A stretch of 64,000 bases of DNA from Heptranchias perlo (Eukaryota), in contig NW_027138407.1 in NCBI RefSeq assembly GCF_035084215.1, positions 930,001 to 994,000 of the forward strand. The letters are read 5' to 3'. Within the stretch, counting starts at the first letter, position 1. Every line of letters starts with the position of its first letter. Of this stretch, positions 7,748 through 36,906 are shown one piece after another. The translations under genes and the position numbers were made by a program. Below the pieces are notes generated by a model. The model did not search any database, had not been told where the DNA came from, and was given only the letters and a program-made list of their open reading frames with translations.

Positions 7748-8429
7748 TGTAGGCAGAGGTCGGCCAGGTGGAGAAAACCCCACTGATTCCAATCACTTCA
7801 TTAAACGTTTCTCAATATTAAAGACACTTACATATTAAAACTAAGAAGTTGCAATATATGCAAGTTCTTAGTGGTCATATTCAGGGGAAGATTAGAAGCT
7901 AATGAACAAGCAATAATGGACGTATAATCTATAAGAACAGATATGGTATGTTCTCGGCACTGCGCCACACAATGAGAAGACCGACTGAATGCAAGTGACT
8001 AATAGAGAACGCATCAAGAAAGAGGTGGTAGCGAGGTAAAAACCGTGAAAAGAACAATGTACAAAGACGAGACAGGGTCGCGCAAGATGACTTAATGGGT
8101 TGAAGTGTTCGGTATTAATTAAAACTAACCAGAGCATGTTGGCATGTTACGATCACGTTAGCAAGACGTTACTAAAACTATGGAAGGTACAACACACCAA
8201 AGTTGAGGGGACTTAAAGGATTGGAGCTTGAGGCAGTCAAGGAAGGACATGAAATCAACACTGCTCTCAATAGGAACGGGTAATATCGCTTCTATTATAT
8301 CTATTGCCTTAGCTGTTAAGATTGTTAGCAATCTGACGTATTAACTGTGCTTTGTCTTGTAATAAAAAAAAACAACTATTTAATTACCACAACAGTTTGG
8401 TCTAGTCTCCTTCTGAATATCTTGCAACA
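7748..8429 (+). mobile_element. Solo-LTR-like insertion
   Basis: TGT...ACA ends, flanks GCAG/GTAG (imperfect 4-bp TSD), AATAAA near 8361. Absent at the paralogous sites near 15200 and 29900. Confidence 0.5.
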
Positions 8430-10609
8430 GTAGCGCGGAAACGGTATTCACCGAATTGAAGCCAAAATTCTAAGGGAGAAATTCTAAATTATTCCACTGG
8501 ATGGCACCAAATCCATAGGAAACACACGGGTGCATCTGCATGCTGACGCCGATCTGTTCCCGTGGCAAGCAGGAGTTCGCTCACATGCAGAGTCGGCCAT
8601 TAACTGCTGAACTAAGGTTGCTGCAGATAACGTCACCCTTTGATTGGTCTGGAACTTGTCTACCAGTAACTCCATGTTTTTAAATCTTTTTGTGTTCCCA
8701 GAAAGCACTCGGGTTAAATTGGTGAGTTCACCTGCCCTCAGAGGAGTGGATTCGCCATCCTGCCTCTATCTCAATCGACGAACCCTGCGTAAAAATACAG
8801 AGTCCGGTCACTTCTACAAGGTCGAAAACCGGTTCTGTAAATAACTTCATAATCGGGTTTGAGATGATCTGATGAGATATGTGCAAATCCATTGGTAAAA
8901 ATGGTCCATGTATCTGATTGGAGCAGCTTAGTCTGACTGACGAACTCCTCGAGTGAGGACGCTTCACCGGTGAAAATGCAGGTTTGGAGACCATTGAAAA
9001 TCCGAGTAAACAATGGAAGGGCCCAGGAATGGCTCAGGAATTGTGTGTCATGAGGAGTGACTCACAGAAAGTATTTCAAAAAAATATTCTCGGGATGTGG
9101 ATGTCACTGGCAAGGCCGGCATTTATTGACCATTCCTAGTTGCCCTGAGAAGGTGATGGTGGGACTTTTTCTTGACGCGCTGCAGTGTAACGGTTCGATA
9201 CAGCTGATTCACTTCAGGAGGCAGTTAAGAGTCACCCACGTTTATTGTGAGACAGGAGTCGCAAGAGATCACGCCGGATAAGGACGGCAGGTTTCCTTCC
9301 TCTAAAGGGACATTAGAGAACAAGTTGGATTTTTTAGAACACTCTGACAGCTTCACGGCCACTTTTACTGATACCAGTTTATTATGTCCAGATATTTATA
9401 CGCTGAAGTCACGTTCTCTGGATTACGAGTCGAGGAACACAACCACTGCACTGACATACTCTGTGAGAAAGTTACAAGCAACTCACATTGGAACAGGAAA
9501 GGATACAGCGTCTGTTTTAATCACATTCCATTACATTTCGATGGATTTGTTTGTTAGTCGATTGTGGCTTTCGTCTTATGTACATGTAAACTTTCTGTGC
9601 AATGAATATAACGTTGGTTTGTCGGCCAGGACACCGGGAGAATTAATTTGGGATGTTTTTACGCTATCGCAAAATGTGCAGGATAAAAGTCATTCTTCAC
9701 AAATTCATTCTCAATGATTCTTAGCACCTTCGAATACAAAAAAGGTGATTCAGCCGCTCAAATCTGCACTTTCGTTCTCACTCCTCACACCGTTCAATAA
9801 ACCTCTAAATCCCCAATGTGCTTCATTTTTGATACAATTCACGCAGAGCGAGTCACTTAACACGTTCTGGCAGAATATTCGACATTCTTACCTCCTCTGT
9901 AAATAATGTTTTCTGACTATTAAAATGTCTCTTTCCAGGAGTGATATTTCCCACCAGGTTAAAATTTATTCGTCCGTCTGTTTCCACAGGGACCAGTAAA
10001 GTTTCTTCTTTCCTTTCCTTTGGTTCAATCTGCGATTCACCGGTTGGGTTGATGACCGGTCACCTCCTCCTGTGATTTCCTGGATTAGGTGTCCAATCTG
10101 CTCAGAGATTCTCTCCGCTCAAAACGACGCCCTCAGTCTGTCGGCAACGACAATAGCGGCAGCTCTGGGCTGGAAAGAGCTTGGAAGGTTGACTCAGTTG
10201 ATGACTCGGCAATGGAGGACCGCGGCTCCCACAATCCACAGCGGCAGAGAAAAGTCAATATCTGTGACACCAGGCGCGCGGCACTCTGGGGAACTGTTCG
10301 CACATGCGCACCTCACCATTTGTTTTTAACCCAACGTTTTTTTTATTCTCTCGCATGTGAGACTTTCACTTTTATCGAACAAGATGGGGCAGTTATTTTG
10401 ATGGAAACTGAAGGCACTTTTCGTTTCGATCTACCCGTTTTATGTAAATAAACGGCAGACATGCGCAGTGTATTACAACATACAAACATGGTCGATTGTA
10501 CGTGGAAAAAACATGGCCCACTGCACGTCACACAAAGAAGACCGACGGTTGTTCAAACAAACATTAACGATTATTCATGTAGCTGTGCAGGTGAATGATT
10601 TATTCATGC

Positions 10610-10788
10610 TGGATAATTCGCAAAGTAGCAACACTGAAGGGAGACAAAATTTCAGGACAATATCTGAAGGCTGTAGACGTGCCTGAAGTTTATGGTTACC
10701 TCAATAAAACGGCCTTCGTCTGGAGGAGGGGAGTTGGTTGAGGGGGTGGGGGTGGGGGAGGGGTGGTGTCTATTATTTTGCAATGAGG
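10610..10788 (+). pseudogene. 5'-truncated V remnant, paralog of 3069-3591
   Basis: WII.KVA..GD.ISGQYL.AVDV..YGYLN homology, a G-rich insertion, and YYFAMR (Cys lost). Heptamer CACAGCG at 10789-10795 with a shortened spacer. Confidence 0.8.
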
Positions 10789-11530
10789 CACAGCGTCAGC
10801 TCAAAGCAAAAACGTCAGCGAGTATTTACAGCTTGATTGGGTTCTGGATGGGAACAATTAACTGGTCCTTGGTGAGCTTGTATCAGGTGAGCGGACCAGT
10901 GGTGTCCGTCTCTTTACCTGCAACCTACTGATGGTCTGTAGCAGAAACAGTTCAGAAAAGCACTCAAAAGGCAATTTTAATTCTTTTTTGAACAGCCCGC
11001 CTGAGGCCAGGTTGACAGGAACACCCACAACCGGGCAATTTAGAATTATTTTCAAATATTTCAGCGTAACTTTACATCCTCCTTCTCGATCTCTTTTATT
11101 CATCTTTTCTAACTCTCATTTCTATGTATTATTGAGAGATAGAGACGACCACACTGAGGCGTACAATCTCAAGCAGAACACGCGGAGCCACTTCCGAGGA
11201 CTGGACAGCTGCATTATCTCTCTTTACAATATTCCAAATCTTTTATGGAACGCAGCCTTCCTATCAAGTAAGTAATTCCCAAAGGGAAATTAGATACATA
11301 CCAGAAAAGGAAAAAGAAGTGCAGGGCTTTGGGTAAAGAGCAGAGGAGTGGGACTAATTAGGTAGCTCATTCAAAGATTCGCCGAAGGCAAGATGGACCG
11401 AACCACATCCTTCTGTGCTGTGGAACTCTACGATTCTATGGAATGAACTCAGAAGAAAAGTTAAATGGACGAGTGGTAAGTTTGACTCAGTAGAACAGGC
11501 ACCGCAACATTCTAGGCTTTGCCCATTTGG

Positions 11531-11630
11531 TGGCAGAGAGTTTCCGTGGCGGAGCTGTCAGACAGCGCCGTGCATTACTGCGCTCTGGGACCATCAGCTT
11601 GCAGCTCCGTGCCCGTCCTGTACAAAAACT
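11531..11630 (+). pseudogene. 3' remnant of the V at 4789-5235 with a broken RSS
   Basis: ..SVAELSDSAVHYCALG, damaged heptamer, nonamer ACAAAAACT at 11622-11630. Flanks are homologous to ~5173-5330. Confidence 0.75.
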
Positions 11631-11756: not shown

Positions 11757-12140
11757 CATCAATTAGGGATTAAACTGTCGCTCATCAATTCGAGAGCGAA
11801 TTGTCTCTCAGGTTAATTAGAGATCAAAATGTCTCTCATATCAATTAGAGAGCAAATCGTCTCTCAGATCAATTACAGAGCAAATTGTCTCTCAGTTGAA
11901 TTTGAGATGAAGCTGTCTGTCAGATCAATTAGAGATTAAACGGTCTCTGAGAACAATTGGAGATCAAACTGTCTCTCAATTGAATTTGAGATGGAGCAGT
12001 CTGTCAGATCAAACACAGATGAAACTGTCTCTCAGATCAATTAGCGATGAAACTTTCTCTCAGATCAATTAGAGTTCAAACTGTCTCTGAAGCAAATTCG
12101 ACATCATGCTTCCATTCAGGTCAATCAGAGATCAAGCTGT
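11757..12140 (+). repeat. 28-bp minisatellite, ~14 units, upstream of a V promoter
   Basis: Tandem TCAATTAGAGATCAAACTGTCTCTCAGA-like units. Confidence 0.85.
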
Positions 12141-12332
12141 GTTTCTTCATCACGCTCGCTCCTGCTGCTCAACAGGAAGTGACGTTTTATCTCAGTTCTC
12201 TGAAATCAACACAGACTTACGGTTGAGGAAGTGACATCAGACCAGCACGAGGTGGCGCTCACAGCCCCTTCCGTTTGATGTTCCGCAGGTTTCTGCGACA
12301 CAAGCAGTCCATTGAATTCCGGAGCAGCAGCA

Positions 12333-13416
12333 ATGGGGCTCCCCGTTCTCGGTGTGGTGTGTGTGACGTTAATTTTCGGTAAGCAGGTTAAAACTTTTAA
12401 AAGGGGTTCATTTTTAAAGGGATATAATTAAAAAGCAGAGGAATTCCATTGTACTTGTATCGAACCTTGGTTCGACCTTCTTGGAGTAATGTTCACCGTT
12501 CTGGTCTCAATATCATAGAAAGGCAATAGAGTCATTGGGGAATGTGCAAAAAAGATTTAAAGTGATAATACCAGAAGTGAAAGGTTGTATCCATCAACAA
12601 AGATTGAACAGGCTTGGTTTATTTTCTCTCGAAAAGAGGAGGCTGAGGGGGGACCTCATGGAGGGCTTGAACATTATGAATGGATTTGATAGGGTAGATG
12701 TAGAGAAAAGGATTCCGCTCATGGGAGTACCTAAAACAGGGCGTGATAAATAAAGTATTCGCTGATAGAACCGGTAAGGAATTCAGAAGGAACTTCTTTA
12801 TTCAGAAAGTGGTTAGAATGTGGAACTCACACGTTTGAGGGGAATCGCATCGATGTATTTAAGAGGAAGCAAGATAATACACGAGGGAGAAAGGAGTAAA
12901 AGGATATACTGATATGGCGAAATGAAGTAGGGAGGGAGGAGGCTCGTGTGGAGCATAAACACCAGCACAGAGCAGTTGGGCCGAATGGCCTGTTTCTCTG
13001 CAGAGAATTCTATGTAAAACTCATTCCGCATTTAGGTAGATTTGCACCTTCATTTCAGTTCAGTTTGAACGTTTAATGGTCGATTTTCGTCTTTTTTAAC
13101 CGTGTGTTCCAGATCTGAGCGATGGAGTTTCTGTTACTCAGCGGGAGCCCTCGGTCACAAAATCAGAGGGAGAAGCTGCCACTTTAACCTGCACCTATTC
13201 CAGCGATGCTTATTACTTATACTGGTACCGCCAATATCCAGGCACGCTGCCCGAGCTTGCAGTCCGGAGGAACAAGAACGGCGGTGAAGAATATCAGGCG
13301 GATTTCGCAAAAAGCCGATTTTCTGATACAGTCCGGCAGTCAGACAAGATGTACCGATTGACAATCTCGGAGCTGCGGCTGTCTGATACCGCGGTTTATT
13401 ACTGTGCAGTAAGACA
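12333..13416 (+). CDS. TCR alpha/delta-type V segment, apparently functional ('GVSVTQRE' family)
   Basis: Leader 12333-12378. V exon 13113-13416: GVSVTQREPS..LTCTYSSDAYYLYWYRQYPG..DTAVYYCAVR (this frame is absent from the ORF track). RSS CACAGTG(13417-13423)-23-ACAAAAACT(13447-13455). Confidence 0.93.
12390..13015 (+). mobile_element. CR1-like LINE 3' fragment in the V intron
   Basis: RLNRLGLFSLEKRRLRGDL motif (ORF 12535-12753) and the CR1 tail. Confidence 0.85.
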
Positions 13417-13744
13417 CACAGTGATGGGAACGACCTAAAGCCTCGCACAAAAACTGCCGCAGGTTTCTGGGTCACAGACTCTGTCTGGTGCAGACTTATT
13501 TTTTTACAGCGGGCCAGACACTGTCACGTGAATGCATTCCTGTGCGCGCACAGCCCGAGCAGAAACCACATCAACCTCATATGAAACCTTTCACATCGAA
13601 TACTGTTTCCATCTCATTATTGCATTAACTGTGTCAGGGCAGAATTTTCTGCTGCTTATTTGTGTTTCTCAGGAAAGCCGCTGATCCTTTTGGGAATACA
13701 AGCACCTGCAGCTGGTCTGGGACTGGTTATCATAAAACCATGCA

Positions 13745-17299: not shown

Positions 17300-17657
17300 A
17301 TCAATTAAAGGTCTCAATTAGAGATGAAACTGTCCCCCAGATCAATTAAAGGTCTCAATTAGAGATCAAACGGTCTCTCAGTTGAATTTGCGATGAAGCT
17401 GTCTGTCAGATCAAATAGAGATCAAACTGTCACTAAGATTAATTATAGATCAAACTGTCTCTCAGAACAATTAGAGATCAAATGTCCGTCAATTGAATTT
17501 GAGATGAAGCTGTCTGTCAGATGAAATGAAGATCAAACTGTCTCTCAGTTCAATTGGCGATCATACTTTCTCTCCGATCAATTAGAGTTCAAACTGTCTC
17601 TCACGTAAATTGGACATCATGTTGCCTTTCAGGTAAATTCGAGATCACGATGTCTCC
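17300..17657 (+). repeat. 28-bp minisatellite, ~13 units, upstream of a V promoter
   Basis: Same unit as 11757-12140. Confidence 0.85.
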
Positions 17658-17846
17658 TTTTATTACTCTTGCTCCCCCTGCTCAGCAAGATGTGACGTTA
17701 TTATCTCAGTTCTCTGAAATGAACACATCCTTTTGGTTGAGGAAGTGACAACAGACCAGCACCAGGCGGCGCTCACACCCTCTTCCGCTTGGTTTTCCGC
17801 AGGTTTCGGCGATACAAGCAGTCCCTCGAATTCCGGAGCAGCAGCA

Positions 17847-18937
17847 ATGCGGTTCCCCGTTCTCGGTGTGGTGTGTGTGACATTAATTTTCGGTAAGCAG
17901 ATTAAAACTTTTAAAAGGGGTTCATTTTTAAAGGGATATAATTGAAAATCAGAGGAATTCTATAGAACGTGTACAGAAGCTTGGTTGGACCTCACTTGGA
18001 GTACTGTGCACAGTTCTGGTCTCCATATTATACAAAGGCAATAGAGGCATTGGAGAATGTGCAAAAAAGATTTACAGTGATGATACCAGATGTGAAAGGT
18101 GATATCTATCAACAAAGATTGAACAGGCTTGGTTTATTTTCTCCAGAAAAGAGAAGGCTGAGGGGTGATCTTATGGAGGGCTTGAAACATATGAATGGAT
18201 TTGATAGGGTAGATGTAGAGAAAATGATTCCGCTTATGTGAGTAACTAAAATTTGGCGTGATAAATAAGGTAGTCGTTTATAGATCCAGTAAGGAATTCA
18301 GGAGAAACTCCTTTACTTCGAAAGTGGTTAGAATGTGGAACTCGCTGCGACACGGAGTGTTTGAGAGGAATAGCATTGATGTATTTAAGGGGAAGCTGGA
18401 TAGAACACGAGGGAGAAAGGAGTAAAAGGATTTGCTGATATGTTGAAAAGAAGTACGAGGCGGGAGGCTCGTGTGGAGGATAAACACCGGCACAGAGCAG
18501 TTGGGCCGAATGGCCTGTTTCTCTGCAGAAAATTCTATTGTAAAACTCATTCCGCATTTAGGTAGATTTGCACCTTCATTTCAGTTTGAACGTTTAATGA
18601 TCGATTTTCGTCTTTTTTAACCGTGTGTTCCAGATCTGAGCGATGGAGTTTCTGTTACTCAGCGGGAGCCCTCGGTCACAAAGACAGAGGGAGAAGCTGC
18701 CACTTTAACCTGCACCTATTCCAACGATGGTTATTACTTGTACTGGTACCGCCAATACCCAGGCAGACTGCCCGAGTTTGCAGTCCGGAGGTACACGAAC
18801 AGCCGTGATGAATATCAGGCGGATTTCGCTAAAAGCCGATTTTCTGATACAGTCCGGCAGTCAGACAAGTTGTACCGACTGACCATCTCGGAGCTGCGGC
18901 TGTCTGACACCGCGGTGTATTACTGTGCAGTGAGTCT
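17847..18937 (+). CDS. TCR V segment with an open frame but a deleted RSS nonamer (likely non-rearranging ORF)
   Basis: Leader 17847-17892 (MRFPVLGVVCVTLIF). V exon 18634-18937 ..YYLYWYRQYPG..DTAVYYCAVS. Heptamer CACAGTG at 18938-18944; about 19 bp including the nonamer are missing relative to 13424-13460. Confidence 0.88.
17905..18540 (+). mobile_element. CR1-like LINE 3' fragment in the V intron
   Basis: ORF 17969-18241: YRSLVGPHLEYCAQFWSP..RRLRGDL. Confidence 0.88.
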
Positions 18938-19254
18938 CACAGTGACGGGAACGAACTAAAGCAGGTTTCTCGGTCACAGACTCTGTCTGTTGCAGGCTGT
19001 TTTTTTTTACAGCGAGCCAGACACTGTCACGTGAATGCATTCCTATGCGCGCACAGCCCGAGCAGACACCACATCAACCTCACATGAAACCTTTCACATC
19101 GAATACTGATTCCATCTCATGATTGCATTAACTGTGTCAGGGCAGAATTTTCTGCTGCTTATTTGTGTTTCTCAGGAAAACCGCCAATCCTATTGGGAAT
19201 ACAAGCACCTGCAGCTGGTCTGGGACTGGTTATCATAAAACCATGCAGCACAGA

Positions 19255-21350: not shown

Positions 21351-23019
21351 ATTCAGCCCACAGGAATTGCACTCTGCGCTGCAGCTGTATCTGACCGCAC
21401 TGAAACTGATACGCGCCAAAACAGACGGCAGGCAGTTTTTTTACGAGAGGAGAACTGGGTTATAACACTTTGCTGGAATAGCTGCAATTTCTGGTCACCG
21501 CCTCTCTTTCAAAGTGCAGTGCTGCAACCGACCACTGCGTGACCGAGTCTGCACAGCTAACACCTGCAGAAATTTCGCGATACATAACGTTAAGCTTTCA
21601 TTATCATTTTATTATAACTAAGAGCACAAGGATAGTGGAGTAAATTGCAAATAGGAAGAAAACTTCTGTGAAAGGAAGATCCTCTATGTCACTAACACGT
21701 GCAAGAGGGAGATCGTGGAACAGTAACTTTACCAGTTAAGAGAGCCACAGCTCTGACCAATAAATAAAAAGTAACATCCTCCATGATTGCAGTGAGTTGA
21801 TGGCTGATTTGAACAGGACGAGTTGAACCTGGAATTCTTTTTAGTCAAGATTTGGGAAGATGTTGAGTAATATCCGGCCTCTCTGCCAATTGGCTTGTTC
21901 CTGACAGAGTCAGCAGGGAAACATCCAATCAGCTCACAGGGTTTTTTTCTCCACTTCATCCAATCAGCTCACAGCTCTTTTGTTCTCCAATTGATCCAAT
22001 CAGCTCATAGCTTCTTTGTTCTCCAATGCAGACAATCAGCTTACCCGCCCTTTGTTCAGCAATTCATGACGGGCGGATGTGAGGAAGGCGTGGGCGGGGC
22101 AGTGTTACCGCAAGGTTTGTCTCGAGATTGTTCTGCAGATAACGGGTTTGATCAGAGACACCGTCAGTCAGGATGCAGTCAGCCGCCGAATGAGCGCAAT
22201 ATACGGTTAATAAAGTCTAACATCATAGAAGGAGCCCATTCGGCCCATCATAAATGTTCCCCAACAATCTCTTTAGTTCCCACTTTCCAGCTCTTTCCCT
22301 ATGGCCCTGCAAATCTTACCTTTGAAGGAAAGTTTCAAAAATATTTAGGTTCTAGACATATTCAATGAACCTTAATCGATCATGTTCATGAATGTTTGTT
22401 TAATTTATGGTAGTGAAGAGGGTGATATATCACCGAGAACATTCAGTTCATTGTCGAGAAACAATTGTGTTTACACGGCGATGGCAGCTCTGTGGTTTAG
22501 ATTTCCTCTTGTCGTCATTTTTCGTGTAATCGGTAAAGCATTCAAAAAGAATCTGTTTACCATTTGGCTGGAATCGTTTTTAGAGGAGATTTCCCTTCTG
22601 TTTGCGATGTCGGTTCCACAGGGAGACCAGAGGAAATCTTCGCCTCATATGCTCCTGTCCTTCTTTTCGTTATTTTCGATAAGGATTATAGACGATGACA
22701 TTTAAACTCTGCCCAGATTAACGTCGTCGAGACAGAGAACTGGAAAATGTTCTCCTTAACCATTGCAAAAAAGCCCCCGACATAAATTACCTCAAGTTGC
22801 TTTCATAAACGCCATGTCATCGATAAAAGTGAAATGAATTGGAATGTGACAGCTTTAAATCAACGTAAAGATAAACGGGTTACACAAATGACCTAAAATT
22901 GTTCTATTAAACTGCGCCCATCTGTAAATGATGGAAGTGCAGTAAGTAGTTTCGTGTGACGCGACTTTAAAGGCGCGGGAGGTTTTTATACAGCGGCTGC
23001 CGCGTTTCCACTCAGCGTG

Positions 23020-23448
23020 CGGCTCTATCGCACAGTAATAGACTGCGGTATCTGCAAACTCCATGCTGTTAATGACCAATTCGCCGCGTTTGTCCGCAGT
23101 GGAAAGATCCAATTCAAAGCGGCCTCCGCTCTCTTTGCCGGACGACATTCGCCTTATTAGCCACTCCAGTCCCTTACTGGTTTTCTGCTTGTACCAATGC
23201 ATGGCGTAAATGCTGGACATATCATAACTACAGTTTATCTGCACCGAATCCCCGATCCGGACTGTTTTCGAAGCGGGAGATTGCAGCACTTGGTCCGCGA
23301 GACATCCACCTGTGAAAACATTCAGATAATGAAACACTGGAACAAAGTGAATAAAACATATTCCCAGTTATTGAGTCCAAATCCTGTACTTACCTGTTAG
23401 CAGCACCACAATGACGGGTAATACATTCGCTTGTATCGAGTAATACAT
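23020..23448 (-). CDS. TCR alpha/delta-type V segment, apparently functional (GLEW family)
   Basis: Leader 23448-23394 (MYYSIQANVLPVIVVLLT). V exon 23309-23020: DQVLQSP..INC..YAMHWYKQKTSKGLEWLI..DTAVYYCAIEP. RSS CACGCTG(23019-23013)-23-ATAAAAACC(22989-22981). Confidence 0.9.
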
Positions 23449-24070
23449 CCTCGCAATTAAGAGGTAGGTAAGAAAACGGCACTCACATCACATCAGATGA
23501 TCACGAACCGAGTGAACACAGTGAACAGTCGGAGAATCAAAGTCAGCGCCGCTCAGTTAAAGTCTCAGTCACGTGTGTCTGCTGCTTTTCGATTGGCTGG
23601 AAATGGATATTATTCACATAATACGTAAGGAGGCAGTTTGTTGATCTGCTCTCACTTCGCCAATGTTCACATCTGTACCGGTCAGTTTTACATAGAAGCA
23701 GAGTATGATCCTTCCTGCCTGTGCTGGATCTTTGAGAGAGATATCCAATTAGTCCCACTGCCCTGTTATTTCCCGATCGCCCTGCAAATTTTACCTTTGC
23801 AAGTGTATATCCAATTCCTTTTTGCAGAACTTTTCATGAACCCTGATATGCTCTCTACAACATTACCCGCAGATAATGTTTAACATAATTACTTTTAACG
23901 TATCATTCATAAATGTCCTATTTTATAGGGTTCCAAATTGTATTAAGGCACGGGATTTCTCTCTCTATCACCTGCTATACACATTATAAGCCGCGTCTGG
24001 ATGTGGAGATTGTCTGATAGGAACCTGCTACAAATATTGTACTGGAGCATTCAGCGTTTCTCTCACTGTG

Positions 24071-24470
24071 CTGCACTGCACAGTAATACACTCCAGCATC
24101 TGATACCGCTGGGCTGTCCATGCCGAGAATGTTATAACTTCTCGTTTGGTCAATGAAGAGTTTGAATCGTCCGTCAGTGGTGTTGCCCCCGATAGCAGAT
24201 ATGATAAATTTCGGGCCACGATTCTGTAGTTGTCTGTACCAGAATATTCTGTCAGTGCCGCTGGTGGTTGCGTTACATTGGATTTTAATCGATTGTCCCT
24301 CTTGTGCAAACATCTGCTGTGGTTGGTGGATCACAGCCTCGCCGCCCAAAACTGTCGATACAAAAAGAGACATGAAAATGAGAAACAACAAATATGATTT
24401 AACAGCAAACGATTTTCTGCACAAAACACTCACCTAAAATCCAAAAAATGAAAGTTCCAATTCTATTCAT
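24071..24470 (-). CDS. TCR alpha/delta-type V segment, apparently functional
   Basis: Leader 24470-24434 (MNRIGTFIFWIL). V exon 24351-24071: VIHQPQ..IQC..IFWYRQ..GRFKLF..DAGVYYCAVQ. RSS CACAGTG(24070-24064)-23-ACAATATTT(24040-24032). Confidence 0.92.
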
Positions 24471-26710
24471 TGCGTTTTCCTGTTTTCTGCACTCGGTGGA
24501 TCAAGAAGGTTACTAGGAAATCGATTTAATTCGGTGTGATTCTGATGTGCAATCGATTATATTATTTCTGCCAGATACGACGGTAGTTATCTCTTTTATC
24601 TTCACCAATGGCCAGGGAACGAGGCAAGTGCTGACGCTTTATTGTCACTGACACGCCCTCAAGTGGCTCGATTTCTCAATTATCCTCTGAACAAAAACAG
24701 TAAAGATCACCGTTAACGCGTGCTGAACTGGTGCTGGAGTGGGTCAGAGACTGACCTTTTAAACTCTGGGGCCTGCGCTCACATCCATACACAGACACCC
24801 AGGGGATGAAGGTATCCTCTGTCTGATGGGAACTGGGTGGGGCGGTGGGTCAGATATTGACCTCTTAACCTCTGGGTCCTGGGGTCAAATGGAACAAACA
24901 GATAGGGGTGAAGGTCTCTTCTCTCTGATGGGGAACAGGTTGGAGCAGCGGGACAGTCCTTTCCTACCTGGAACGTGGGTTATAGAACAGTTGGGTTGGA
25001 AAGAATAGAGAACTGTTGTCTCTGATGGGGACTGAGCAGATCCGTTGGTTTAACGCTGGTATTTCTCCTGCATTGAAATACAGCCCAGAAATTGAGTAAA
25101 GGGGGAATTTGGTTTCTGCTGTGAAGGTCTTGAATTTAATTGGGGGGGGGGGGGGTAGGGGGTTTGACGTTTGTTGTCGTGGCAAGGTGGTGATATACGT
25201 GATTATGCTGATTACACTGGCCACACAGTATTGACTTCTCCCGCCTTCTACTACATAAACCGTCACCTAATCGAAGATAATGTTTGAGGAATGGAGTCGA
25301 AAATAAATACTTGGGTATTTTCGCTGCATCGAAAATCACCAACGTAGTAGCTGCGCCACCTGGCGACCCATTCGAGTTACATCGAGTTGCATCGAAACCA
25401 CAGCAGAGAAACAGGTCATTCGGCCCAACTGGTCTATGCAGAGGCTTATGCTCTACAAGAGCCTCCTCCCTCCCTAATGCATCTAACCTTATCAGCATAC
25501 TCTTCTATTCCTTTTCCCTCATGTACTTATCTAGTTTCTCCTAAAATGCATCTCTGTTATTTGCCTCAATTACTCCTTGGAGTAAATACTTTTTTGCCAA
25601 ATTTGTCAATGAGGGAAGAACAGTGAGAGAAACAGAGAGTCAATGATGGAAATAAAGGGTGAGAGATTAAGATAAACAGAGGGAAAGAGTGAGGGAAAGA
25701 AAGGGAGTGGGAGAAACAATGGAAGAGGCAGGGAGAGAAGCAATAGCTAAAGTAGAAGCAAGAATTCGAGGAAACAAAAGCCAATAACATAAATATGTAA
25801 GCTAGCAAGTGATATGGAAAGGTTTAATCTGGAAAACGACTTTAACTTAAACAGCGGCCGTAGGATAAGTGGGCACAGGTTCAAACTAGTAAAAGGCAAT
25901 ATTAGGACTGAGATCAGTAGATTCTTGCTCACACAGGGAGTGATCGAGATTGGAATGGACTCCGGGCAAAGTGACAGAGTCCAAAACTACGAAATTACTT
26001 TAGAAACAACTAGAGGATTTTTTTTATTGCAGGGATGTTTCCGGAAGGATGAATTAAGATGGGACGAGCGGATTTCCTCATCCACAAGAACCTTGTGATC
26101 TTGCAATTGGTCTGCTGCAGTGAAAAGGAAAACACGATGAGGGAGCTCCCTCTGGTGACTATGTGAGGTAAATGGCCCTCGGCCTGGGAAATTATTGAAT
26201 TCTCAAATTACTAATGCATGTTGTTGGATGATTACGTCACATTTAATGCAGATAAATATATCCACGACGTTGATTGCAACGCCAGATTAAACCCTGGTGA
26301 TTCCATTTGTTTATTTTTAGGAACGCAGACATACATGTTGAATGATGCTCGCTTGAAACAATACGAAACCACAGAGATGCCGATGAGATGCCGACTATTA
26401 TTTACCGTGCCATATACAAAGGATGTCGATTTGTCTCATGATTCCTGCCTATATAATATACTGTGGGATTTTTAATGTAACTGGTGCCAATTTAAACGTC
26501 TCGGAGCTGACGTTATTATCTAATATCTACTGCTAATGTTAATGGAACACATTGTTTGGTGCAATGGTAGAAATCAGAGATTGAGTCAAATGGGATTTTT
26601 AAAATTCTGCACCTTCAGGGAACACAGTAGAGAAAGCTACAGAGAGAGAAAACGAGAGAGTGTCTCCAAGATAGAGTAAGAGGAGATGGAGACACAGAAT
26701 GAATGAAAGA

Positions 26711-27306
26711 CCTGAATATGGTGGGGATTACAAACACACCATATTGATGCAGAGCACGGGGAGAGAGAACGGGATCCTGAACACGCTCGGGATTACAGAC
26801 ACAGAGATACAGAGCACAGAGACAGAGAGTACAAAGACATGAAGATGGTGGGGATTACAGACACAGTGATACAGAGCACGAGGAGAGAGTACAAATAACT
26901 GAACATGGTGGGGGTAACAGACACTCAACAATACGAAAGACCGGGACAGAGAGCACAGAAATCTTAAGGTGGTGGGGATGTCAGATACAGAGCACAGGGA
27001 GTAAGTAAACAATCCTGAACATAGTGAGGATTACAGACACACGGTGTTACAGATTCACAGCGAGAGGCTGGAAAAACATGAAAATGGTGGCGATTGCAGA
27101 CACACGGTGATACAGAGCACAGGGAGAGATCTTACAAAACCTGAACAAGGTGCGGATTACAGATACACTGTGGTGCAGAGCACAGGGAGTGAGTACGAAA
27201 ATATGATCACAGTGGGGATTACAGGCACACGGCGATACAGAGCACAGGGAGAGAGTGCAAAAACCTGAACATAGTGTGGATTACTGATACACTGTGGTGC
27301 AGAGCA
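26711..27306 (+). repeat. ~62-bp minisatellite (~10 units) whose unit is an RSS-like heptamer-22/24bp-nonamer
   Basis: Consensus by eye: CCTGAACATGGTGGGGATTACAGACA-CACRGTG-ATACAGAGCACAGGGAGAGAGT-ACAAAAA. Examples: CACAGTG(26862)-22-ACAAATAAC and CACGGCG(27228)-22-GCAAAAACC. Confidence 0.85.
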
Positions 27307-28016
27307 TTATTGTACGATCCGCTGTCGGCCATGTTTGTGTGACATGTGGTCGTCCATGTTTCTGTGATGTGCAGTCGGCAATGTTGTATGACAACACGCA
27401 GCGTATGTGACCCATTTATTTAAATCAATCAGCTCAATTGAAAAGGTAAGAGAATTCTGTTTCTAGTAAAGTGACCGCTCAGTCTTAATCAGTAAAACTG
27501 AACGTTTGGCTCCCGAGAGATTTCAAAAAGCGCTCTCTGAAAACGGTTGGTGCGGTGCGCATGTGCGAACAGCTCTCCCAGGGTACAGCGCGGCTCGTGT
27601 CACAGATAGGGGCTTTACTCTGCCGCAGTGAATTGTGGGATCTGTTGTCCTCCATGGGCGGGTCATGAACTGAGTGAATCCAAACCCAACCTGCTTCCAG
27701 CCGGAGCTGCCCGGGTTGTCAGTCCCGACACACTGCGGGTGTCCTGTTGAGCGGAGCAGATTGGACATTTAATCCTGGAAAGCGGAGGAGGAGGTGACCG
27801 ATCATCAACCCAACCGGTGAATGACAGATTGAGCCAAAGGAAAGGAAAGAAGAAACTTTACTGGTCCGTGTGGAAACAGGAGGACGAATAAATTTAAACC
27901 CTAGGGGGGAAGTATGACGACAAGAAAGAAACATTTTAATGGACAGAAAGCATTATTTCCGCAAATGTAAAGAATCTTACAGCACCAGGTTATAGTCCAA
28001 CAATTTTATTTGAAAA

Positions 28017-28053
28017 TCACAAGCTTTCGGAGATTACCTCCTTCGTCAGGTGA
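28017..28053 (-). ncRNA. Minimal type-I hammerhead-ribozyme-like motif (left arm)
   Basis: Exact reverse complement of 28309-28345. Confidence 0.5.
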
Positions 28054-28308
28054 GTGAGTGTGGGACTCCTTGAACGTTTCGCATTTATAGTCATAGAACA
28101 ATACCTGGATGTTCCTTTTGGATGTTTCTCCCTCTCTCTCTCTGTCTTGTGTTCTGGCCGTTTGTGTATTCGGTGGTCCTGTTGGTAACACCTCTCCGTC
28201 TGAACACTTTGATTGCCTTGACAACGGGCAGTTGGAAAGATTATCTGTAATCACCAGGTAATGTTCTCTAACTATAAATGCGAAACGTTCAAGGAGTCCC
28301 ATACTCAC

Positions 28309-28345
28309 TCACCTGACGAAGGAGGTAATCTCCGAAAGCTTGTGA
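28309..28345 (+). ncRNA. Minimal type-I hammerhead-ribozyme-like motif (right arm)
   Basis: UCAC-CUGACGA-A-GGAG(GUAAU)CUCC-GAAA-GCUU-GUGA: helix I UCAC/GUGA, catalytic core CUGANGA/GAAA, helix II GGAG/CUCC, palindromic AGCU helix III. Confidence 0.5.
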
Positions 28346-29999
28346 TTTCCAAATAAAATTGTTGGACTATAACCTGGTGTTGTAAGATTCTTTACATTTG
28401 TCAAACCCAGTCCATCACCAGCATCTCCACATCATTATTTCCGCAGAGGGAGGTAAGATGTCGAATATTCTGCCAGAAAGTATTAGTGACTCGGATTGCG
28501 TGAATTACTTTAAAAATGAAGCACATTGGGGATTTAGAGGTTTATTGAAGGGTGTGAGGAGCGAGATCAAAAGTGCAGATTTGACCGGCTTAATCTCCTT
28601 TTTTAGTGTTTTAAGGTACTAAGGTTCATTGAGAATGAATTTGTGAAAAATGTTTTTTATCCTGTACATTTTGCGACATCGTATAAACATTCCAAAATAT
28701 TCTCCCGGTGTCCTGGCCGACAAATCCACGTTATATTCATTGCAGAGAAAGTTTACATGTACATGAGACAACAGCCACAATCGACTAACAAACAAATCCA
28801 TCGAAATGTAATGGAATATGAATGAAACAGACACGATTTTCCTTTTCTGTTCCAACGTGAGTTGCTTGTAACTTTCTCACAGTGTACGGCAGTGTCGTCG
28901 TTCAGTTCCTATACTCATAATCCAGAGAACGCGAGTTCAGCAAATAAAAAATTGGACATAATGAGCTGGTATCAGTAATAGTGACCGCGATGCTGTTGGG
29001 TTGTCCAAAAAAAACCAACTTTTGCATTAATGTCCCTTTAGGGGAAGGACACCTGCCTTCCTTATCCTGCCTGAGCTCTATGTGACTTCAGTCTCATTAC
29101 CAATTTGGGTGACTAGTAACTGACTCCTGAAGTGGTCTAGCAAGTCATTCAGCTGTATCAAACCACTGCAGCACTTCAAGAAGAAGACCCATCATCACCT
29201 TCTCAGGGCAACTCGGAATGGTTAATAAATGCCGGCCTTGCCAGCGACATCCACATCCGGAGAATGAATTTTTAAAAATACTTTCTGTGTGCCATTCCTT
29301 GTGACGCACGTTCCCCGAATAGTTCCTGGGCCCTTCATGGTTTGGTCGGATTTTCAATGGTCTCCAAATCTTCATTATCTTCACCGCTGAAACCTCCTCC
29401 AGGCGTTCGTGATTCAGACTAAAAGCTGCTGCAATCAGATACATGGACCATTTTATCAATGGATTTGCACATTTCTCAGCAGATCATCTTAAACCCGATT
29501 GTGAAGTTATTTACAGAACGGGTGGTCGACCCTGTAGACGTGACCAGACTCTATCTTTTTTTACCCAGTGTCCATCGAGTGAGACAGAGACAGGATGGAG
29601 AATCCGCTCCCCTGAGGACAGATGAACTCACCAATTAACCCCAAGTGCTTTATGGGAGCAGAAAAAGATTTGAAAACACGTATTTGCTGATAGAGAGGGT
29701 GACCTTGTCGCCAGCAACCGTAGTTCAGCAGTTAATGGCCGAGTCTGTGTGTGATCTCCTGTATAATACGCGCAGAGATCGGCGTTTCCAGAAAGATGCT
29801 GCCGGGTGATTCCTGGGGAATTGCTGCCACCTAGTGGAATTCGTCATAATTTCTTCCTGAGAATTTTGCCTTCAATCCAAGTTTCGGTGAACTACTGTTT
29901 CCGATTTACTCTCGAAAAATATGTTAAACCAATCCTTAATTGACCGCTTGGCGGGCGTTACTTCCGAAGCAACATTGCACCGGTATAACCGGTATATGA

Positions 30000-30662
30000 G
30001 AAAGTTGATCAAGCCATTAAAACAATTTACAGAAGCATTATAAATAGGGGCGTCGAGTACAAAAGCAAGGAAGTTATGCTAAACCTGCATAAATAACTGG
30101 TTTGGCACCAGCTATAGCATTATGGCCAATTCCGGGCAGCACACTTTAGGAAGGACGCCTAGGTCTTGGAGAAGTTGCAGAGAAGATTTACTAGAATGGT
30201 ACTAGGGATGAAGGGCTTCAGTTATCTGGAAAGACTGTAGAAGCCGGGATTGTTCGCCTTACAGGAGAAAGGATTACGAGGAGATTTAATAGAGGGGTTC
30301 AAAATTATGAGGGGTTTTGATAGAGTAAATGAGGAAAAAATGTTTCCACTGGCAGGAGGGCCGGTAACCAAAAGACACAGATTTAATTTTATTGGCAAAA
30401 AAAACCAGGGGGGGGGGAGATGAAGAGAATTCTTTTTAGGCAGCGAGTTGTTATGACTTGGAATCTACGGCCTGAAAGGGTGTTGGAAGCAGATTCAATA
30501 GCAACTTTCAAAAGAGAATTGGATCTCTGCTTAAAACGAAATGAAATACAGTTCTATGAGGAAAGGAGCAACGGTGCGGGACTAATTGGACAGCTCTTTC
30601 AGCGAGCCAGCACAGGCACGATGGGCCGAATGACCTACTTCTATGTTGTACGCTTCTATGAT
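30000..30662 (+). mobile_element. CR1-like LINE 3' fragment
   Basis: EYKSKEVMLNL, GDLIE.FKIMRGFDRV and QRVVMTWN motifs, plus the CR1 tail. Confidence 0.8.
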
Positions 30663-30962
30663 AACCAGTTCCAGACCACCTGCATGTGTATGCATTCTGA
30701 ATGAGTCTGGCGAGTTCCCAGATATTTACTAATCAACAGCAGCAAATTCTACCCTCACACAGTTAATGCAATAATCAGACGGAATCAGTATTCGATGTGA
30801 ATGGTTTTATGTGAGGTTTGAGTGGTTCCTGCTCGGGGTCTGTGCGCACGGGAATACATTCATGGGTCGGTGGCTGGCACGCTATTGTAAGGAGACCGCA
30901 ACAGTGACCCAGAAACATGCAACAGTTATTGTACGAGACTTTTGCTCGTTCCCATCACTGTG

Positions 30963-32058
30963 AGACTCGATGCACAGTAATACTCGGCGGCGTCAGACAG
31001 TCGCAGCTGCGAGATGATCAATTGATACAACTTGTCTGACTGCTGGATTGTATCAGTAAACCGGCTTTGAGCGAAATCCACCTGATATTCAGAACGGCCG
31101 TTCACGTCTCTCCGGACGGCAAACTCGGGTTGTCTGCCTGGGTACTGGCGGTACCAGAATAAGTAATAGCCATCGCTGGGATAGGTGCAGGTTAAAATGG
31201 CAGCTTTTCCCTCTGTCTGTGTGACCGAGGACTCCCTTTGAGAAACAGAAACTCCATCGCTCAGATCTGGAACACACGGTTAAAGAAGGCGGAGGTGATC
31301 GAATAAAAGTCCAAACTGAACTGAACTGACGGTGAAAATGCATCTAAATGCCGATTGAGATTTACATAGAATTACATAGACTTTAGAGAACAGACACAGG
31401 CCACTAGGCCCATCTGGTCTATGTCAGTGTTTGTGCTGCGGACGAAGCTCCTCTCATCCCACTTCATCTAACCCTATCAGCATAACCTTCTATTCCTGTC
31501 TCCCTCGTGCACTTATCTGGCGTCCGCTTAAATGCATTCGCACTATTCACCTCAACCATTCAATGTGGTAATGAGTTCCACTCTTTGGGTAAAGACGTTT
31601 CTCCTGAATTCCTTACTAGATTTAATACGTAATTTCTTACACTTTTGACCGCTAGTGTTAGATTCCCAAAAAGCAGAAATATGTTCTCTACGTCTACCTT
31701 ATCAACCGCTTCATAATCTTAAAAACCTCCAACAGATGGACCCTCAAATTTCTATTTTCTAGAGAAAAGAGTCACAGCCTGTTGAATCTTTCCTGATAGT
31801 TATAAGCTTCCCGTTCTGGTATCATCCTTCTAATTCTATTCTTGCACCTCTCCGATGCCTCTATATCCTTTTTATAACATGAAGACAATAACTGTGCACA
31901 ATACTCTAAGTTTGGACAAACCGAGGTTCTATACAAGTTTAACATAACTTCTCTGCTTGTCAATTCTATTCATCTAGAAATGAACCCCTTTTAAAAGTTT
32001 TAACCTTCTTACCGAAAATGAATGTCACACACAACACCACGAGAACGGGAAGTCGCAT
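30963..32058 (-). CDS. TCR alpha/delta-type V segment, apparently functional ('GVSVTQRE' family, inverted copy)
   Basis: Leader 32058-32013 (MRLPVLVVLCVTFIF). V exon 31266-30963: GVSVSQRES..LTCTYPSDGYYLFWYRQYPG..DAAEYYCASS. RSS CACAGTG(30962-30956)-23-ACAATAACT(30932-30924). The intron carries the family CR1 fragment (~31365-31990). Confidence 0.9.
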
Positions 32059-32249
32059 TTCTCCTGCTCCCGAATTCAAGGGGCTTTTAGTGTCTCAAAA
32101 ACCTGAAGAACATCGAACAGAAAGAGAATAGAGTGACGGCCGGAGCTGGTCTGATGTCATTTACTTAACCACAAGTATGTGTTTATTTCAGAGAACTGAG
32201 AGTAACGTCATATCCTGCTGAGTAAAGGGAGCAAGACCAAGAATAAAAC

Positions 32250-32577
32250 AGCTTGTTCTCTAATTGACCTGAGGGACAGCTTGATGTCGAATTTACCTGA
32301 GAGACAGCTTGATCTCTAATTGACCTGAGAGACAGCTTGATCTCCAATTGACCTGAGAGACAGCTTGATCTCTAATTGACCTGAGGGACAGCTCGATCTC
32401 GAATTGACCTCAATTAAAGTTTTATCTCTAATTCACCTGCGAAACAATTTTATCTCAAATTAAACTGAGAAACAGTTTTGATCTCTAATTGATCTGAGAA
32501 ACAGTTTGATCTCTAATTCAGCAGAGAAACAGTTTGATTTCTAATTCACCTGAGAAACAGTTTGATCTCTAATTAGC
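32250..32577 (-). repeat. 28-bp minisatellite, ~11-12 units, upstream of the inverted V
   Basis: Reverse complement of the 11757-12140 unit. Confidence 0.85.
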
Positions 32578-36228: not shown

Positions 36229-36522
36229 AACAGAAATACATGGCAGTATCGGAGATCATGGCATTGCTCATCGTTAGCTCGGTAATTTTAGTAGTTTTGT
36301 TAAATGTGGAAGAACATCAATGAGTGAAGTCGGGGTTCTGGTTTATTATCCTTCCGGTAAGCCAGATCACGCACTGTGGAGACTGCACGGGTTGCTGACG
36401 GTACCAGAACACATAAAGGCTAGGTCTGTTTGTTTTGAACGTGCAGGTTACTGTGACATTACTTTCTTCTTCAACCGTCATTTCAGGACCCTGCTGTTCC
36501 ACTATGGCATGGTGACTCCATT
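36229..36522 (-). pseudogene. TCR V pseudogene, paralog of 45605-46097
   Basis: VEQQGPEMTV..VTCT..VFWYRQQP..DFTH*(36319-36317)..DTAMYFC. The RSS is deleted and the leader appears cut by the LINE insertion near 37010. Confidence 0.85.
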
Positions 36523-36544
36523 CTAAAATACAAGGTAGTAATGG

Positions 36545-36906
36545 NNNNNNNNNNNNNNNNNNNNNNNNNNNNNNNNNNNNNNNNNNNNNNNNNNNNNNNN
36601 NNNNNNNNNNNNNNNNNNNNNNNNNNNNNNNNNNNNNNNNNNNNNNNNNNNNNNNNNNNNNNNNNNNNNNNNNNNNNNNNNNNNNNNNNNNNNNNNNNNN
36701 NNNNNNNNNNNNNNTCATCAGCANNNNNNNNNNNNNNNNNNNNNNNNNNNNNNNNNNNNNNNNNNNNNNNNNNNNNNNNNNNNNNNNNNNNNNNNNNNNN
36801 NNNNNNNNNNNNNNNNNNNNNNNNNNNNNNNNNNNNNNNNNNNNNNNNNNNNNNNNNNNNNNNNNNNNNNNNNNNNNNNNNNNNNNNNNNNNNNNNNNNN
36901 NNNNNN
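36545..36906. other. N runs (36545-36714 and 36724-36906), probably an (ATC)n microsatellite in the V intron
   Basis: Flanked by ATC-like repeats. The paralogous intron at 45720-45790 contains (ATG)n/(ATT)n. Confidence 0.75.

What the first reader, a model, noticed from the sequence alone, without database searches (positions are those of the whole stretch)
26711..27306. Minisatellite built from recombination signal sequences: a tandem array of orphan 22/23-RSSs inside the V cluster
Seen: about 10 tandem 60-65-bp units with consensus CACAGTG-ATACAGAGCACAGGGAGAGAGT(22 nt)-ACAAAAACC, i.e. the canonical heptamer and nonamer at 23-type spacing. The spacer ends in 'GT', like many real V RSSs in this window. 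Individual units: CACAGAG(26800)-24-ACAAAGACA; CACAGTG(26862)-22-ACAAATAAC; CACGGTG(27040)-23-GGAAAAACA; CACGGTG(27103)-24-ACAAAACCT; CACTGTG(27166)-22-ACGAAAATA; CACGGCG(27228)-22-GCAAAAACC; CACTGTG(27290), truncated. No V exon precedes any of them, and they face opposite to the flanking minus-strand Vs. Established: RAG1/2 needs CAC, tolerates 23+/-1 spacers, and uses coding-less RSSs (deltaRec, kappa-deleting element). Inference: an amplified RSS that could act as a RAG decoy, a deleting/inverting element array, or a germline instability hotspot; it sits at the edge of the inverted duplication starting near 27520.
Basis: partly seen in the sequence, partly recalled or inferred. Interest (0 to 1): 0.88.

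Follow-up and report, generated by a model that had tools for sequence, protein, structure and literature searches.

The report
RSS-like minisatellite in shark TCR V cluster
A single-locus tandem repeat of about ten 62-base units sits between T-cell-receptor V genes of a shark, and its founding unit looks like a near-perfect recombination signal, but the copies seem to be decaying freely rather than being kept for use.

Summary
Tandem Repeats Finder gives 9.6 copies of a 62-bp unit at 26706-27291, 67% matches.

The window is a dense TCR alpha/delta V cluster with about 20 V or pseudo-V segments on both strands.

The RSS likeness is not compositional. With a matrix built from 14 local V signals, the majority consensus unit scores 23.8. 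None of 20,000 mononucleotide and none of 20,000 dinucleotide shuffles reach that. Eight other tandem-repeat consensus units in the window score -3.9 to 5.5. Three units score 16.1-19.1, inside the range of real V signals (12.1-25.4 leave-one-out).

Against a kept function:
- Heptamer and nonamer columns are the least conserved part of the unit (71.6% vs 85.3%).
- Only 1 of 10 units has CACAGTG.
- No unit has both motifs intact.
- No V body lies next to the array.
- No spacer or flank similarity to the 20 local V signals tested.

The exact array is single-copy.

Best reading: a locally born, neutral minisatellite seeded on an RSS or RSS-grade site, leaving a few cryptic 23-type signals. A decoy or deleting role is untested. 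The scan's first readers noted similar arrays elsewhere in this genome; none has been checked.

The parts
26706..27306 (+). 62-bp minisatellite, about 9.6 units; the last three units form a 125-bp higher-order repeat
   Evidence: TRF; self-BLAST; unit alignment
26629..26705 (+). Purine-rich stretch that looks like one or two older, degenerate units at the left edge
   Evidence: Sequence; partial alignment of the stretch starting at 26663 to the units; TRF 16-bp row at 26629-26660
26862..26899 (+). Unit with CACAGTG, 22-nt spacer, ACAAATAAC; PWM 16.1
27103..27142 (+). Unit with CACGGTG, 24-nt spacer, ACAAAACCT; PWM 19.1, the best unit
27228..27265 (+). Unit with CACGGCG, 22-nt spacer, GCAAAAACC; PWM 17.1
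26800..26839 (+). Weak unit: CACAGAG, 24-nt spacer, ACAAAGACA; PWM 12.8
27166..27203 (+). Weak unit: CACTGTG, 22-nt spacer, ACGAAAATA; PWM 11.8
27040..27078 (+). Unit with CACGGTG, 23-nt spacer, GGAAAAACA; not among the 30 best plus-strand PWM sites listed, so below 11.6
27324..32314 (-). Copy B of an inverted duplication (partner 6027-10546 on the plus strand). It carries the V segment with heptamer at 30962 and ends 18 bp from the array. The partner copy has no minisatellite beyond its boundary.
27324..27393 (+). 25-bp tandem repeat (2.8 copies) lying inside the stretch that matches the partner copy at 9901-10546
23984..24433 (-). Nearest V on the left (TCR alpha-like); 23-RSS heptamer at 24070
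30962..31156 (-). Nearest V on the right; the span runs from its 23-RSS heptamer (30962) to the WYRQ motif of the V body (31156)

Best explanation
This is a locally born, single-locus minisatellite in an intergenic gap of a shark TCR alpha/delta V cluster. A roughly 62-bp segment carried a near-consensus recombination signal: CACNGTG, a 22-nt spacer starting AT and ending GT, then ACAAAAACC. That signal was most likely an orphaned V-type RSS, or otherwise a strong cryptic one.

The segment was amplified head-to-tail by replication slippage or unequal exchange. The latest step copied a 125-bp dimer. Since then the copies have drifted without selection for RAG use, and the (CA)n-like, CpG-bearing heptamer and the A-tract nonamer have decayed fastest.

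What remains are three to five cryptic 23-type signals of weak-to-moderate quality on the plus strand. In thymocytes these could at most support rare, non-productive deletional or inversional joins with 12-RSS partners.

Shown: the array, its RSS-like consensus and its significance, single-copy status, the conservation pattern, and the lack of a neighbouring V body. Inferred: the RSS ancestry of the seed, the amplification mechanism, neutrality, and any RAG cleavage.
For: - Array structure.
- The consensus unit scores 23.8 on a matrix from 14 local V signals. The 14 real signals score 12.1-25.4 leave-one-out. 0 of 20,000 mononucleotide and 0 of 20,000 dinucleotide shuffles reach 23.8; the dinucleotide maximum is 23.0.
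- 8 of 8 other TRF consensus units in the window score 5.5 or less.
- Units at 27103, 27228 and 26862 score 19.1, 17.1 and 16.1. The window's 99.9th percentile is 7.7.
- The local style matches. A real V (heptamer 654, minus strand) uses CACGGTG with a 22-nt spacer. GT precedes the nonamer in 15 of 19 local V signals.
- Position 4 of CACNGTG is the least discriminating heptamer position for RAG1/2, and an AT spacer start is in the best class (PMC9723617, passages).
- Neutral drift: signal columns agree with the consensus at 71.6% against 85.3% for the other columns. Only 20 of 100,000 label permutations are as low.
- Single locus: a 1,493-bp contig with 0 differences spans the array at depth 49, against flanks of 47-49.
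- No matching contigs lie on the array in two runs guessed to be RNA. There is no Rfam family and no inverted repeats.
Against: - No V remnant lies directly 5' of the array. tblastn of 13 V translations against 24500-27600 finds nothing in 25600-26700 at E<0.01.
- No similarity between the unit's spacer or flanks and any of 20 local V signal contexts. The lowest of the 60 comparisons is 48 of 1,000 shuffles, which is unremarkable for that many tests.
- No progenitor copy elsewhere in the window; best E is 0.13.
- RSS ancestry therefore rests only on the 16-20 signal positions of a reconstructed consensus.
- Faster decay of the signals could also mean selection against cleavable copies rather than neutrality.
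- Function in lymphocytes was not testable.
Confidence: 0.6

Rival explanations
1. Pure coincidence. This is an ordinary purine-rich, G-skewed minisatellite whose CA/AG-rich unit happens to read like an RSS, with no RSS ancestry and no relation to RAG.
For: - The unit is ACAG/GAGA-rich, with strong strand asymmetry: GC skew 0.179 and AT skew 0.163 over 26001-28000.
- No V body, spacer or flank homology to real local signals.
- Only 1 of 10 units has CACAGTG.
- This genome appears very rich in minisatellites, and first readers repeatedly saw 'signals' in them (unchecked notes). That raises the number of trials and the risk of pattern-seeking.
- Cryptic signals were estimated at about 5x10^-4 per bp in mammalian genomes (PMC2193808, passage).
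Against: - The consensus score of 23.8 is not reached by any of 40,000 composition-preserving shuffles.
- The other eight repeat consensus units score 5.5 or less.
- The only sites of 16 or more found outside the array without a V directly upstream are 25224 (17.8) and 36378 on the minus strand (16.6, inside a V body).
- The consensus also matches the local extras: AT after the heptamer and GT before the nonamer.
- The array lies inside a V cluster, which is a tiny fraction of the genome.
Confidence: 0.25
2. A selected RAG element. The array would work as a multi-copy coding-less 23-RSS, analogous to deltaRec or the kappa-deleting element. It would either pair with a 12-RSS to delete or invert part of the locus, or act as a decoy or sink that tunes V usage.
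For: - Three units score within the range of real V signals.
- 5 of 10 units keep CACNGTG, which RAG1/2 uses about as well as CACAGTG in plasmid assays (PMC9723617, passages).
- Spacers of 22 and 24 nt also occur at real V segments here: heptamers at 654 (minus strand) and 46098.
- Cryptic sites inside a V region do rearrange at low frequency in mouse thymocytes (bioRxiv 10.64898/2026.09.01.748595, abstract).
- Tandem gamma-satellite units with 23-type cryptic signals are cut by RAG (PMC2193808, passages).
- A relative (organism B) keeps 179 bp of the array with 1 difference.
Against: - Signal columns are the least conserved part of the unit.
- No unit has both motifs intact, one unit has lost the heptamer, and two have poor ones.
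- The paralogous copy of the adjoining block has no such element.
- No break or join data exist.
- The near-identity in organism B is uninformative, because its flank is also about 96% identical (6 differences in 169).
Confidence: 0.07
3. Counter-selected RSS array. The units began as cleavable signals, and their heptamers and nonamers have been preferentially inactivated by selection against harmful RAG cutting inside the V cluster.
For: Signal columns decay faster than spacer and flank columns: 71.6% vs 85.3%. Without heptamer position 4 the figure is 74.4%, with 68 of 100,000 permutations as low. Depletion of RSS-like sites near RAG-accessible genes is described in PMC5203794 (abstract) and PMC7768089 (passage).
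Against: Mutational bias explains the same pattern. The heptamer sits in a (CA)n-like run with a CpG, and the nonamer is an A-tract; both are slippage- or deamination-prone. There are only ten units, and contiguous columns are not independent.
Confidence: 0.08

Closest known systems
Cryptic 23-type recombination signals in the tandem 234-bp mouse gamma-satellite (Cowell et al. 2003, PMC2193808; passages read)
   Same: A tandemly repeated unit that carries a complex, physiologic-looking 23-type signal. Individual copies vary in predicted quality. In the mouse, some copies are cut by RAG on plasmids and in the genome.
   Different: Gamma-satellite is described as about 6% of the mouse genome, lying outside antigen-receptor loci. 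This array is about 10 units at one locus inside a V cluster. No cleavage data exist here.
Isolated, coding-less RSS used as deleting elements (deltaRec in TRA/TRD, kappa-deleting element/RS); recalled, apart from a search-listing abstract that mentions 'RS deletion' (PMC2211894)
   Same: RSS-like signal without an adjoining V, D or J body, inside an antigen-receptor locus. 23-type spacing that could pair with a 12-RSS.
   Different: Those are single, conserved signals with documented rearrangement. This is a decaying multi-copy array whose signal positions are its least conserved part. Usage is not shown.
Ordinary G-rich minisatellites
   Same: Unit of about 62 bp, head-to-tail copies, strand asymmetry, higher-order dimer, intergenic position, roughly 30% divergence between units.
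   Different: The consensus unit scores as a near-consensus RSS, unlike the 8 other tandem-repeat consensus units in the window.
V-segment 23-RSS of this locus
   Same: CACNGTG heptamer, AT start and GT end of the spacer, ACAAAAACC nonamer, 22-24-nt spacer. PWM scores of three units overlap the real range.
   Different: No V coding body 5' of any unit, no spacer or flank homology, and no intact unit.

Membership tests
Minisatellite | Head-to-tail tandem copies of a 10-100-bp unit | tested here: met
   TRF: period 62, 9.6 copies, score 370. All units are in one orientation and there are no inverted repeats.
Minisatellite | Confined to one or few loci rather than dispersed as a transposon or satellite | tested here: met
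   A single 1,493-bp contig at single-copy depth spans the array. One other listed 647-bp contig matches about 2.3 units with 25 mismatches and 9 gaps. The neighbouring transposons reach depths of 10^4-10^6. There is no other copy in the window.
Functional 23-RSS | Heptamer beginning CAC with the CACNGTG-type purine/pyrimidine pattern | tested here: inconclusive
   5 of 10 units have CACNGTG. Two more keep CAC plus a purine-pyrimidine-purine pattern at positions 5-7 (CACGGCG, CACCATA). Two have poor heptamers and one has none.
Functional 23-RSS | A-rich nonamer close to ACAAAAACC at 23 +/- 1 nt | tested here: inconclusive
   The best nonamers match 8 of 9 (27228) and 7 of 9 (26862, 27103, 26800). 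Spacers are 22 nt in three units, 23 in one and 24 in two.
Functional 23-RSS | Signal positions conserved more than the spacer among related copies | tested here: not met
   Heptamer 70.0% and nonamer 72.8%, against spacer 87.4% and flank 83.4% agreement with the consensus.
Functional 23-RSS | Adjoins a V, D or J coding segment | tested here: not met
   No V homology lies directly 5' of the array. The ORF list shows only a 94-aa low-complexity ORF on the opposite strand.
Functional 23-RSS | Cleaved and joined by RAG1/2 in lymphocytes | not testable with these tools
   Only Logan contigs of DNA runs, and of runs guessed to be RNA, were available. No listed joint lies in the array, and 115 further joints were not shown.
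Coding-less deleting element (deltaRec / Kde type) | Single conserved isolated RSS with documented locus-deleting rearrangement | tested here: inconclusive
   It is isolated from coding segments, but it is multi-copy and decaying. Rearrangement and cross-species conservation could not be tested. The one relative seen is too close to be informative.
Satellite-borne cryptic RSS (gamma-satellite type) | High-copy, genome-wide tandem satellite | tested here: not met
   Depth over the array is about 1-2 times single copy, except one low-complexity bin at 524.

The most novel reading that the evidence does not exclude
RSS-seeded minisatellites are a recurrent, locus-specific feature of shark antigen-receptor loci. 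This array and at least four other first-reader notes in the same genome (all unchecked) describe tandem arrays of RSS-like units.

Germline RAG nicking at a signal, or repair of such breaks, would trigger local tandem duplication. The resulting multi-signal arrays would then be disarmed by preferential loss of heptamers and nonamers. The array's position 18 bp from an inverted-duplication breakpoint would fit RSS-associated germline breakage shaping the V cluster.
Probability: 0.1. Interest if true: 0.75.

Novelty: new variant of a known kind. Interest (0 to 1): 0.42.

Why it matters
If the seed was a true RSS, this array is a natural record of what happens to recombination signals once they are freed from a gene segment. 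It gives ten paralogous copies in one genomic context whose decay can be read position by position. It is also a ready-made panel of natural heptamer, spacer-length and nonamer variants to test with shark or mouse RAG.

If such arrays prove enriched in shark antigen-receptor loci, they would link germline RAG activity to minisatellite birth and to V-cluster rearrangement. Germline RAG activity is recalled from the germline-joined shark Ig genes.

If it is only a chance look-alike, it is a caution for motif-based RSS annotation in repeat-rich genomes.

Tried and rejected
- Derivation from a neighbouring V's RSS. Global alignments of the unit's spacer, 3' flank and 5' flank against 15 and then 5 more local V signal contexts, each with 1,000 shuffles, gave nothing beyond chance. 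The lowest values were 48, 51 and 63 of 1,000 among 60 tests. Local alignment of a consensus dimer only picked up the short heptamer or nonamer matches.
- A progenitor copy in the window. Relaxed blastn of the consensus dimer gave a best outside hit of E 0.13.
- A V remnant upstream. tblastn of 13 V translations against 24500-27600 gave only a 15-residue FR2-like hit at 24579-24623 (E 0.003) and weaker hits. None adjoins the array.
- The paralogous copy of the adjoining block as a guide to the ancestral state. It carries no array beyond its boundary. Instead it is followed by a stretch (10610-11534) 68% identical to the V end, signal and downstream flank at 3445-4341.
- A transposon-borne repeat. 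Rejected by single-copy depth.
- A known RNA family: none found.
- A signal-joint-like head-to-head structure: none found.
- The search for homologous proteins with a V gave no hit.
- The search of earlier findings by sequence was blank.
- Literature. No paper describing a tandem array or minisatellite of RSS in an antigen-receptor locus turned up in four searches; a fifth search looked for papers on the shark TCR delta locus. The library lacks most subscription journals.
- Papers, and what I saw of each: PMC2193808, PMC9723617 and PMC7768089 as passages only; PMC5203794 and bioRxiv 10.64898/2026.09.01.748595 as outline and abstract only. No supplementary files were requested, so I did not see Supplementary Dataset S1 of PMC9723617, which may hold the full heptamer ranking.
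- A RIC or REC score was not computed because neither model is on hand. A 16-position matrix from 14 local V signals was used instead.

Full report
**What is there.**
Positions 26706-27291 hold a tandem array with a 62-bp period, 9.6 copies, 67% matches and 9% indels. The right-hand 2.6 copies form a 125-bp higher-order repeat at 79% matches. Self-BLAST confirms this.

I split the array into ten units of 52-65 bp plus a truncated 29-bp last unit and aligned them. The left flank, from about 26630 to 26705, is purine-rich and aligns partly to the unit, so it probably holds older copies. All units point the same way and there are no inverted repeats. No Rfam family matches. The only ORF over the array is a 94-aa low-complexity reading on the opposite strand.

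**Context.**
The window is a dense V cluster.
- Four tested ORFs hit Pfam V-set.
- One V is closest to solved TCR alpha chains and another to antibody VH domains.
- An ESM Atlas look-up of a third V lists TCR alpha/delta variable clusters.
- Ten V segments with WYRQ...YYC and a downstream signal were found by pattern. Further V or pseudo-V segments turned up from signal scans, giving about 20 on both strands.

Alpha-like V segments mixed with VH-like ones fit a TCR alpha/delta locus. An earlier follow-up note of this scan calls the genome a sevengill shark. I could not verify that, because the protein search was blank.

The array lies in the widest V-free gap of this part of the window, between minus-strand V segments with heptamers at 24070 and 30962. 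It reads as an RSS on the plus strand.

**Are the units RSS-like beyond chance?**
I built a 16-position log-odds matrix from 14 local V signals.
- Leave-one-out, the real signals score 12.1-25.4.
- The window's 99.9th and 99.99th percentiles, over 127,922 positions scored on both strands with spacers 22-24, are 7.7 and 19.9.
- The units at 27103, 27228 and 26862 score 19.1, 17.1 and 16.1. Those at 26800 and 27166 score 12.8 and 11.8. The others are lower.
- Outside the array, the only listed sites of 16 or more with no V directly upstream are 25224 (17.8) and 36378 on the minus strand (16.6, inside a V body).

The majority consensus of the units scores 23.8, and TRF's own consensus scores 26.0. 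None of 20,000 mononucleotide shuffles (maximum 19.7) and none of 20,000 dinucleotide shuffles (maximum 23.0) reach 23.8. That test allowed both strands and six spacer lengths. The eight other tandem-repeat consensus units of the window score -3.9 to 5.5.

The consensus also shares two local habits:
- GT before the nonamer, seen in 15 of 19 real signals.
- AT after the heptamer, which is in the best spacer-start class in high-throughput RAG assays (PMC9723617, passages).

The same paper reports that heptamer position 4 is the least discriminating and that CACNGTG variants rank together. So the T/G/A variation at that position among units does not itself argue against RAG use. A real V in this window (heptamer 654, minus strand, open reading frame ending IYYCALS) uses CACGGTG with a 22-nt spacer.

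**What argues against a kept function.**
Agreement with the consensus is 70.0% for heptamer columns and 72.8% for nonamer columns, against 87.4% for the spacer and 83.4% for the rest of the unit.
- Signal versus non-signal columns: 71.6% against 85.3%, with 20 of 100,000 label permutations as low.
- Without heptamer position 4: 74.4%, with 68 of 100,000 as low.

Real RSS families show the opposite pattern. Most position-wise information lies in heptamer and nonamer (PMC2193808, abstract passage).

Further points against:
- Only 1 of 10 units has CACAGTG and 5 of 10 have CACNGTG.
- One unit has lost the heptamer and two have poor ones.
- No unit has both motifs intact.

The heptamer lies in a (CA)n-like run with a CpG, and the nonamer is an A-tract. 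Mutational bias therefore explains the faster decay as well as counter-selection does.

**Origin.**
I found no V body next to the array. There is no similarity between the unit's spacer or flanks and 20 real signal contexts, and no progenitor copy in the window.

The array starts 18 bp beyond the end of an inverted duplication, 6027-10546 against 32314-27324. The partner copy has no array beyond its boundary. Instead it is followed by a stretch (10610-11534) 68% identical to 3445-4341, which covers the end of the V at 3412-3582, its signal and its downstream flank.

Units differ from each other about as much as these duplicated blocks do: pairwise unit identities are mostly 42-85%, and the blocks are 75-80% identical. 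The order of events is therefore open.

RSS ancestry remains an inference from the consensus. I think it more likely than coincidence for two reasons. A 62-bp seed drawn from a cluster with one 39-bp signal every roughly 3 kb would contain a whole signal about 1% of the time. A non-RSS seed would reach this score far less often. I give it roughly 2:1, not more.

**Copy number, relatives, expression.**
Logan contigs were laid on 25600-28400 for one DNA run of organism A, a small DNA run of organism B, and two runs guessed to be RNA.
- In the DNA run of organism A, one 1,493-bp contig (26371-27863) spans the whole array with 0 differences at depth 49.1. The left flank contig has depth 46.8.
- Array bins read 60-105, except 524 at 26728-26821, which is the ACAGAG-like low-complexity part.
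- One other 647-bp contig matches 26984-27129 with 25 mismatches and 9 gaps, so at least one related locus exists.
- Neighbouring elements at 25788-26069 and 27950-28400 reach 10^4 to 10^6, so they are high-copy transposons.
- Organism B has a 179-bp contig over 26980-27158 with 1 difference, and a flank contig with 6 differences in 169. It is too close a relative to say anything about constraint.
- The two runs guessed to be RNA put nothing on the array. One has depth 6-42 at 26540-26727, just left of it.
- The joints listed all lie in the transposon at 28005-28365, and 115 more were not shown.

**Comparison with what is known.**
The nearest precedent I found is the set of cryptic 23-type signals in the tandem 234-bp mouse gamma-satellite. 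They were predicted by RIC and shown to be cut on plasmids and in the genome (PMC2193808, passages). That repeat is a genome-wide satellite, whereas this one is a single-locus array inside a V cluster.

Cryptic sites within a mouse V-beta region do rearrange at low frequency (bioRxiv 10.64898/2026.09.01.748595, abstract), so rare use of the better units is plausible.

Four literature searches found no description of a tandem RSS array in an antigen-receptor locus. The library is incomplete.

First readers of this scan noted RSS-like minisatellites at four other places in the same genome (s1-882586, s1-883255, s1-883286, s1-883071). They also left many notes of other 'signals amplified into minisatellites'. 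None of these has been checked.

**Verdict.**
The descriptive part of the interpretation (an RSS-unit minisatellite) is supported. The functional part (decoy, or deleting or inverting element) is not supported by the conservation pattern and is otherwise untested.

Most likely this is a neutral, locally born minisatellite seeded on an RSS-grade sequence, now a small cluster of weak cryptic 23-type signals.

Noticed in passing
window 22855-23337 (-) and about 56273-56583 (+): V segments whose closest solved relatives are antibody VH domains sit among TCR alpha-like V segments. This resembles the VH-delta / TCR-associated Ig-like V arrangement (a recalled term). Only the first was searched against solved structures. 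The second is 69.6% identical to it in DNA.
   Followed up: partly
window 6027-7672, 12076-13730, 17589-19233, 32314-30661: Four copies, 75-78% identical, of a roughly 1.65-kb V block. Each starts with a 28-bp minisatellite (arrays at 6027, 11753, 17355 and 32246), followed by a V of one family and its 23-RSS.
   Followed up: partly
window 18938-19000 (+): This V has an intact open frame ending YYCAVS and a CACAGTG heptamer. The expected nonamer is missing: compared with its paralogues, the end of the spacer and the nonamer appear deleted.
   Followed up: no
window 27962-28108 and 28254-28400: A 147-bp inverted-repeat pair, 96% identical, with summed contig depths of 10^5-10^6 in all four runs laid. 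It looks like a very high-copy MITE-like element, and many internal-deletion joints are seen in it.
   Followed up: no
window 615-980 (-): A functional-looking V (…AIYYCALS) whose signal is CACGGTG, a 22-nt spacer and ACAATATCT. This is a natural 22-spacer V signal in the locus.
   Followed up: partly
window 10610-11534 (+): A stretch 68% identical to 3445-4341, which covers the V end, signal and downstream flank of the V at 3412-3582. It looks like a decayed pseudo-V, and its signal seems shortened by a deletion in the spacer/nonamer.
   Followed up: no
window 1-422 vs 23266-23687: The most similar duplicated stretch seen in the window (90.8% over 422 bp). It overlaps the upstream end of the ORF of the VH-like V and the sequence beyond it, which suggests a recent duplication.
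   Followed up: no
window 25224-25261 (+): An isolated cryptic signal (CACAGTA, 22-nt spacer, ACATAAACC; PWM 17.8) with no V reading frame upstream. It lies next to a fragment (25374-25579) that resembles the upstream regions of one V family.
   Followed up: partly
window about 36500-36900: The window holds 353 N, which in ORF translations interrupt a minus-strand V (…FWYRQQPVQS).
   Followed up: no
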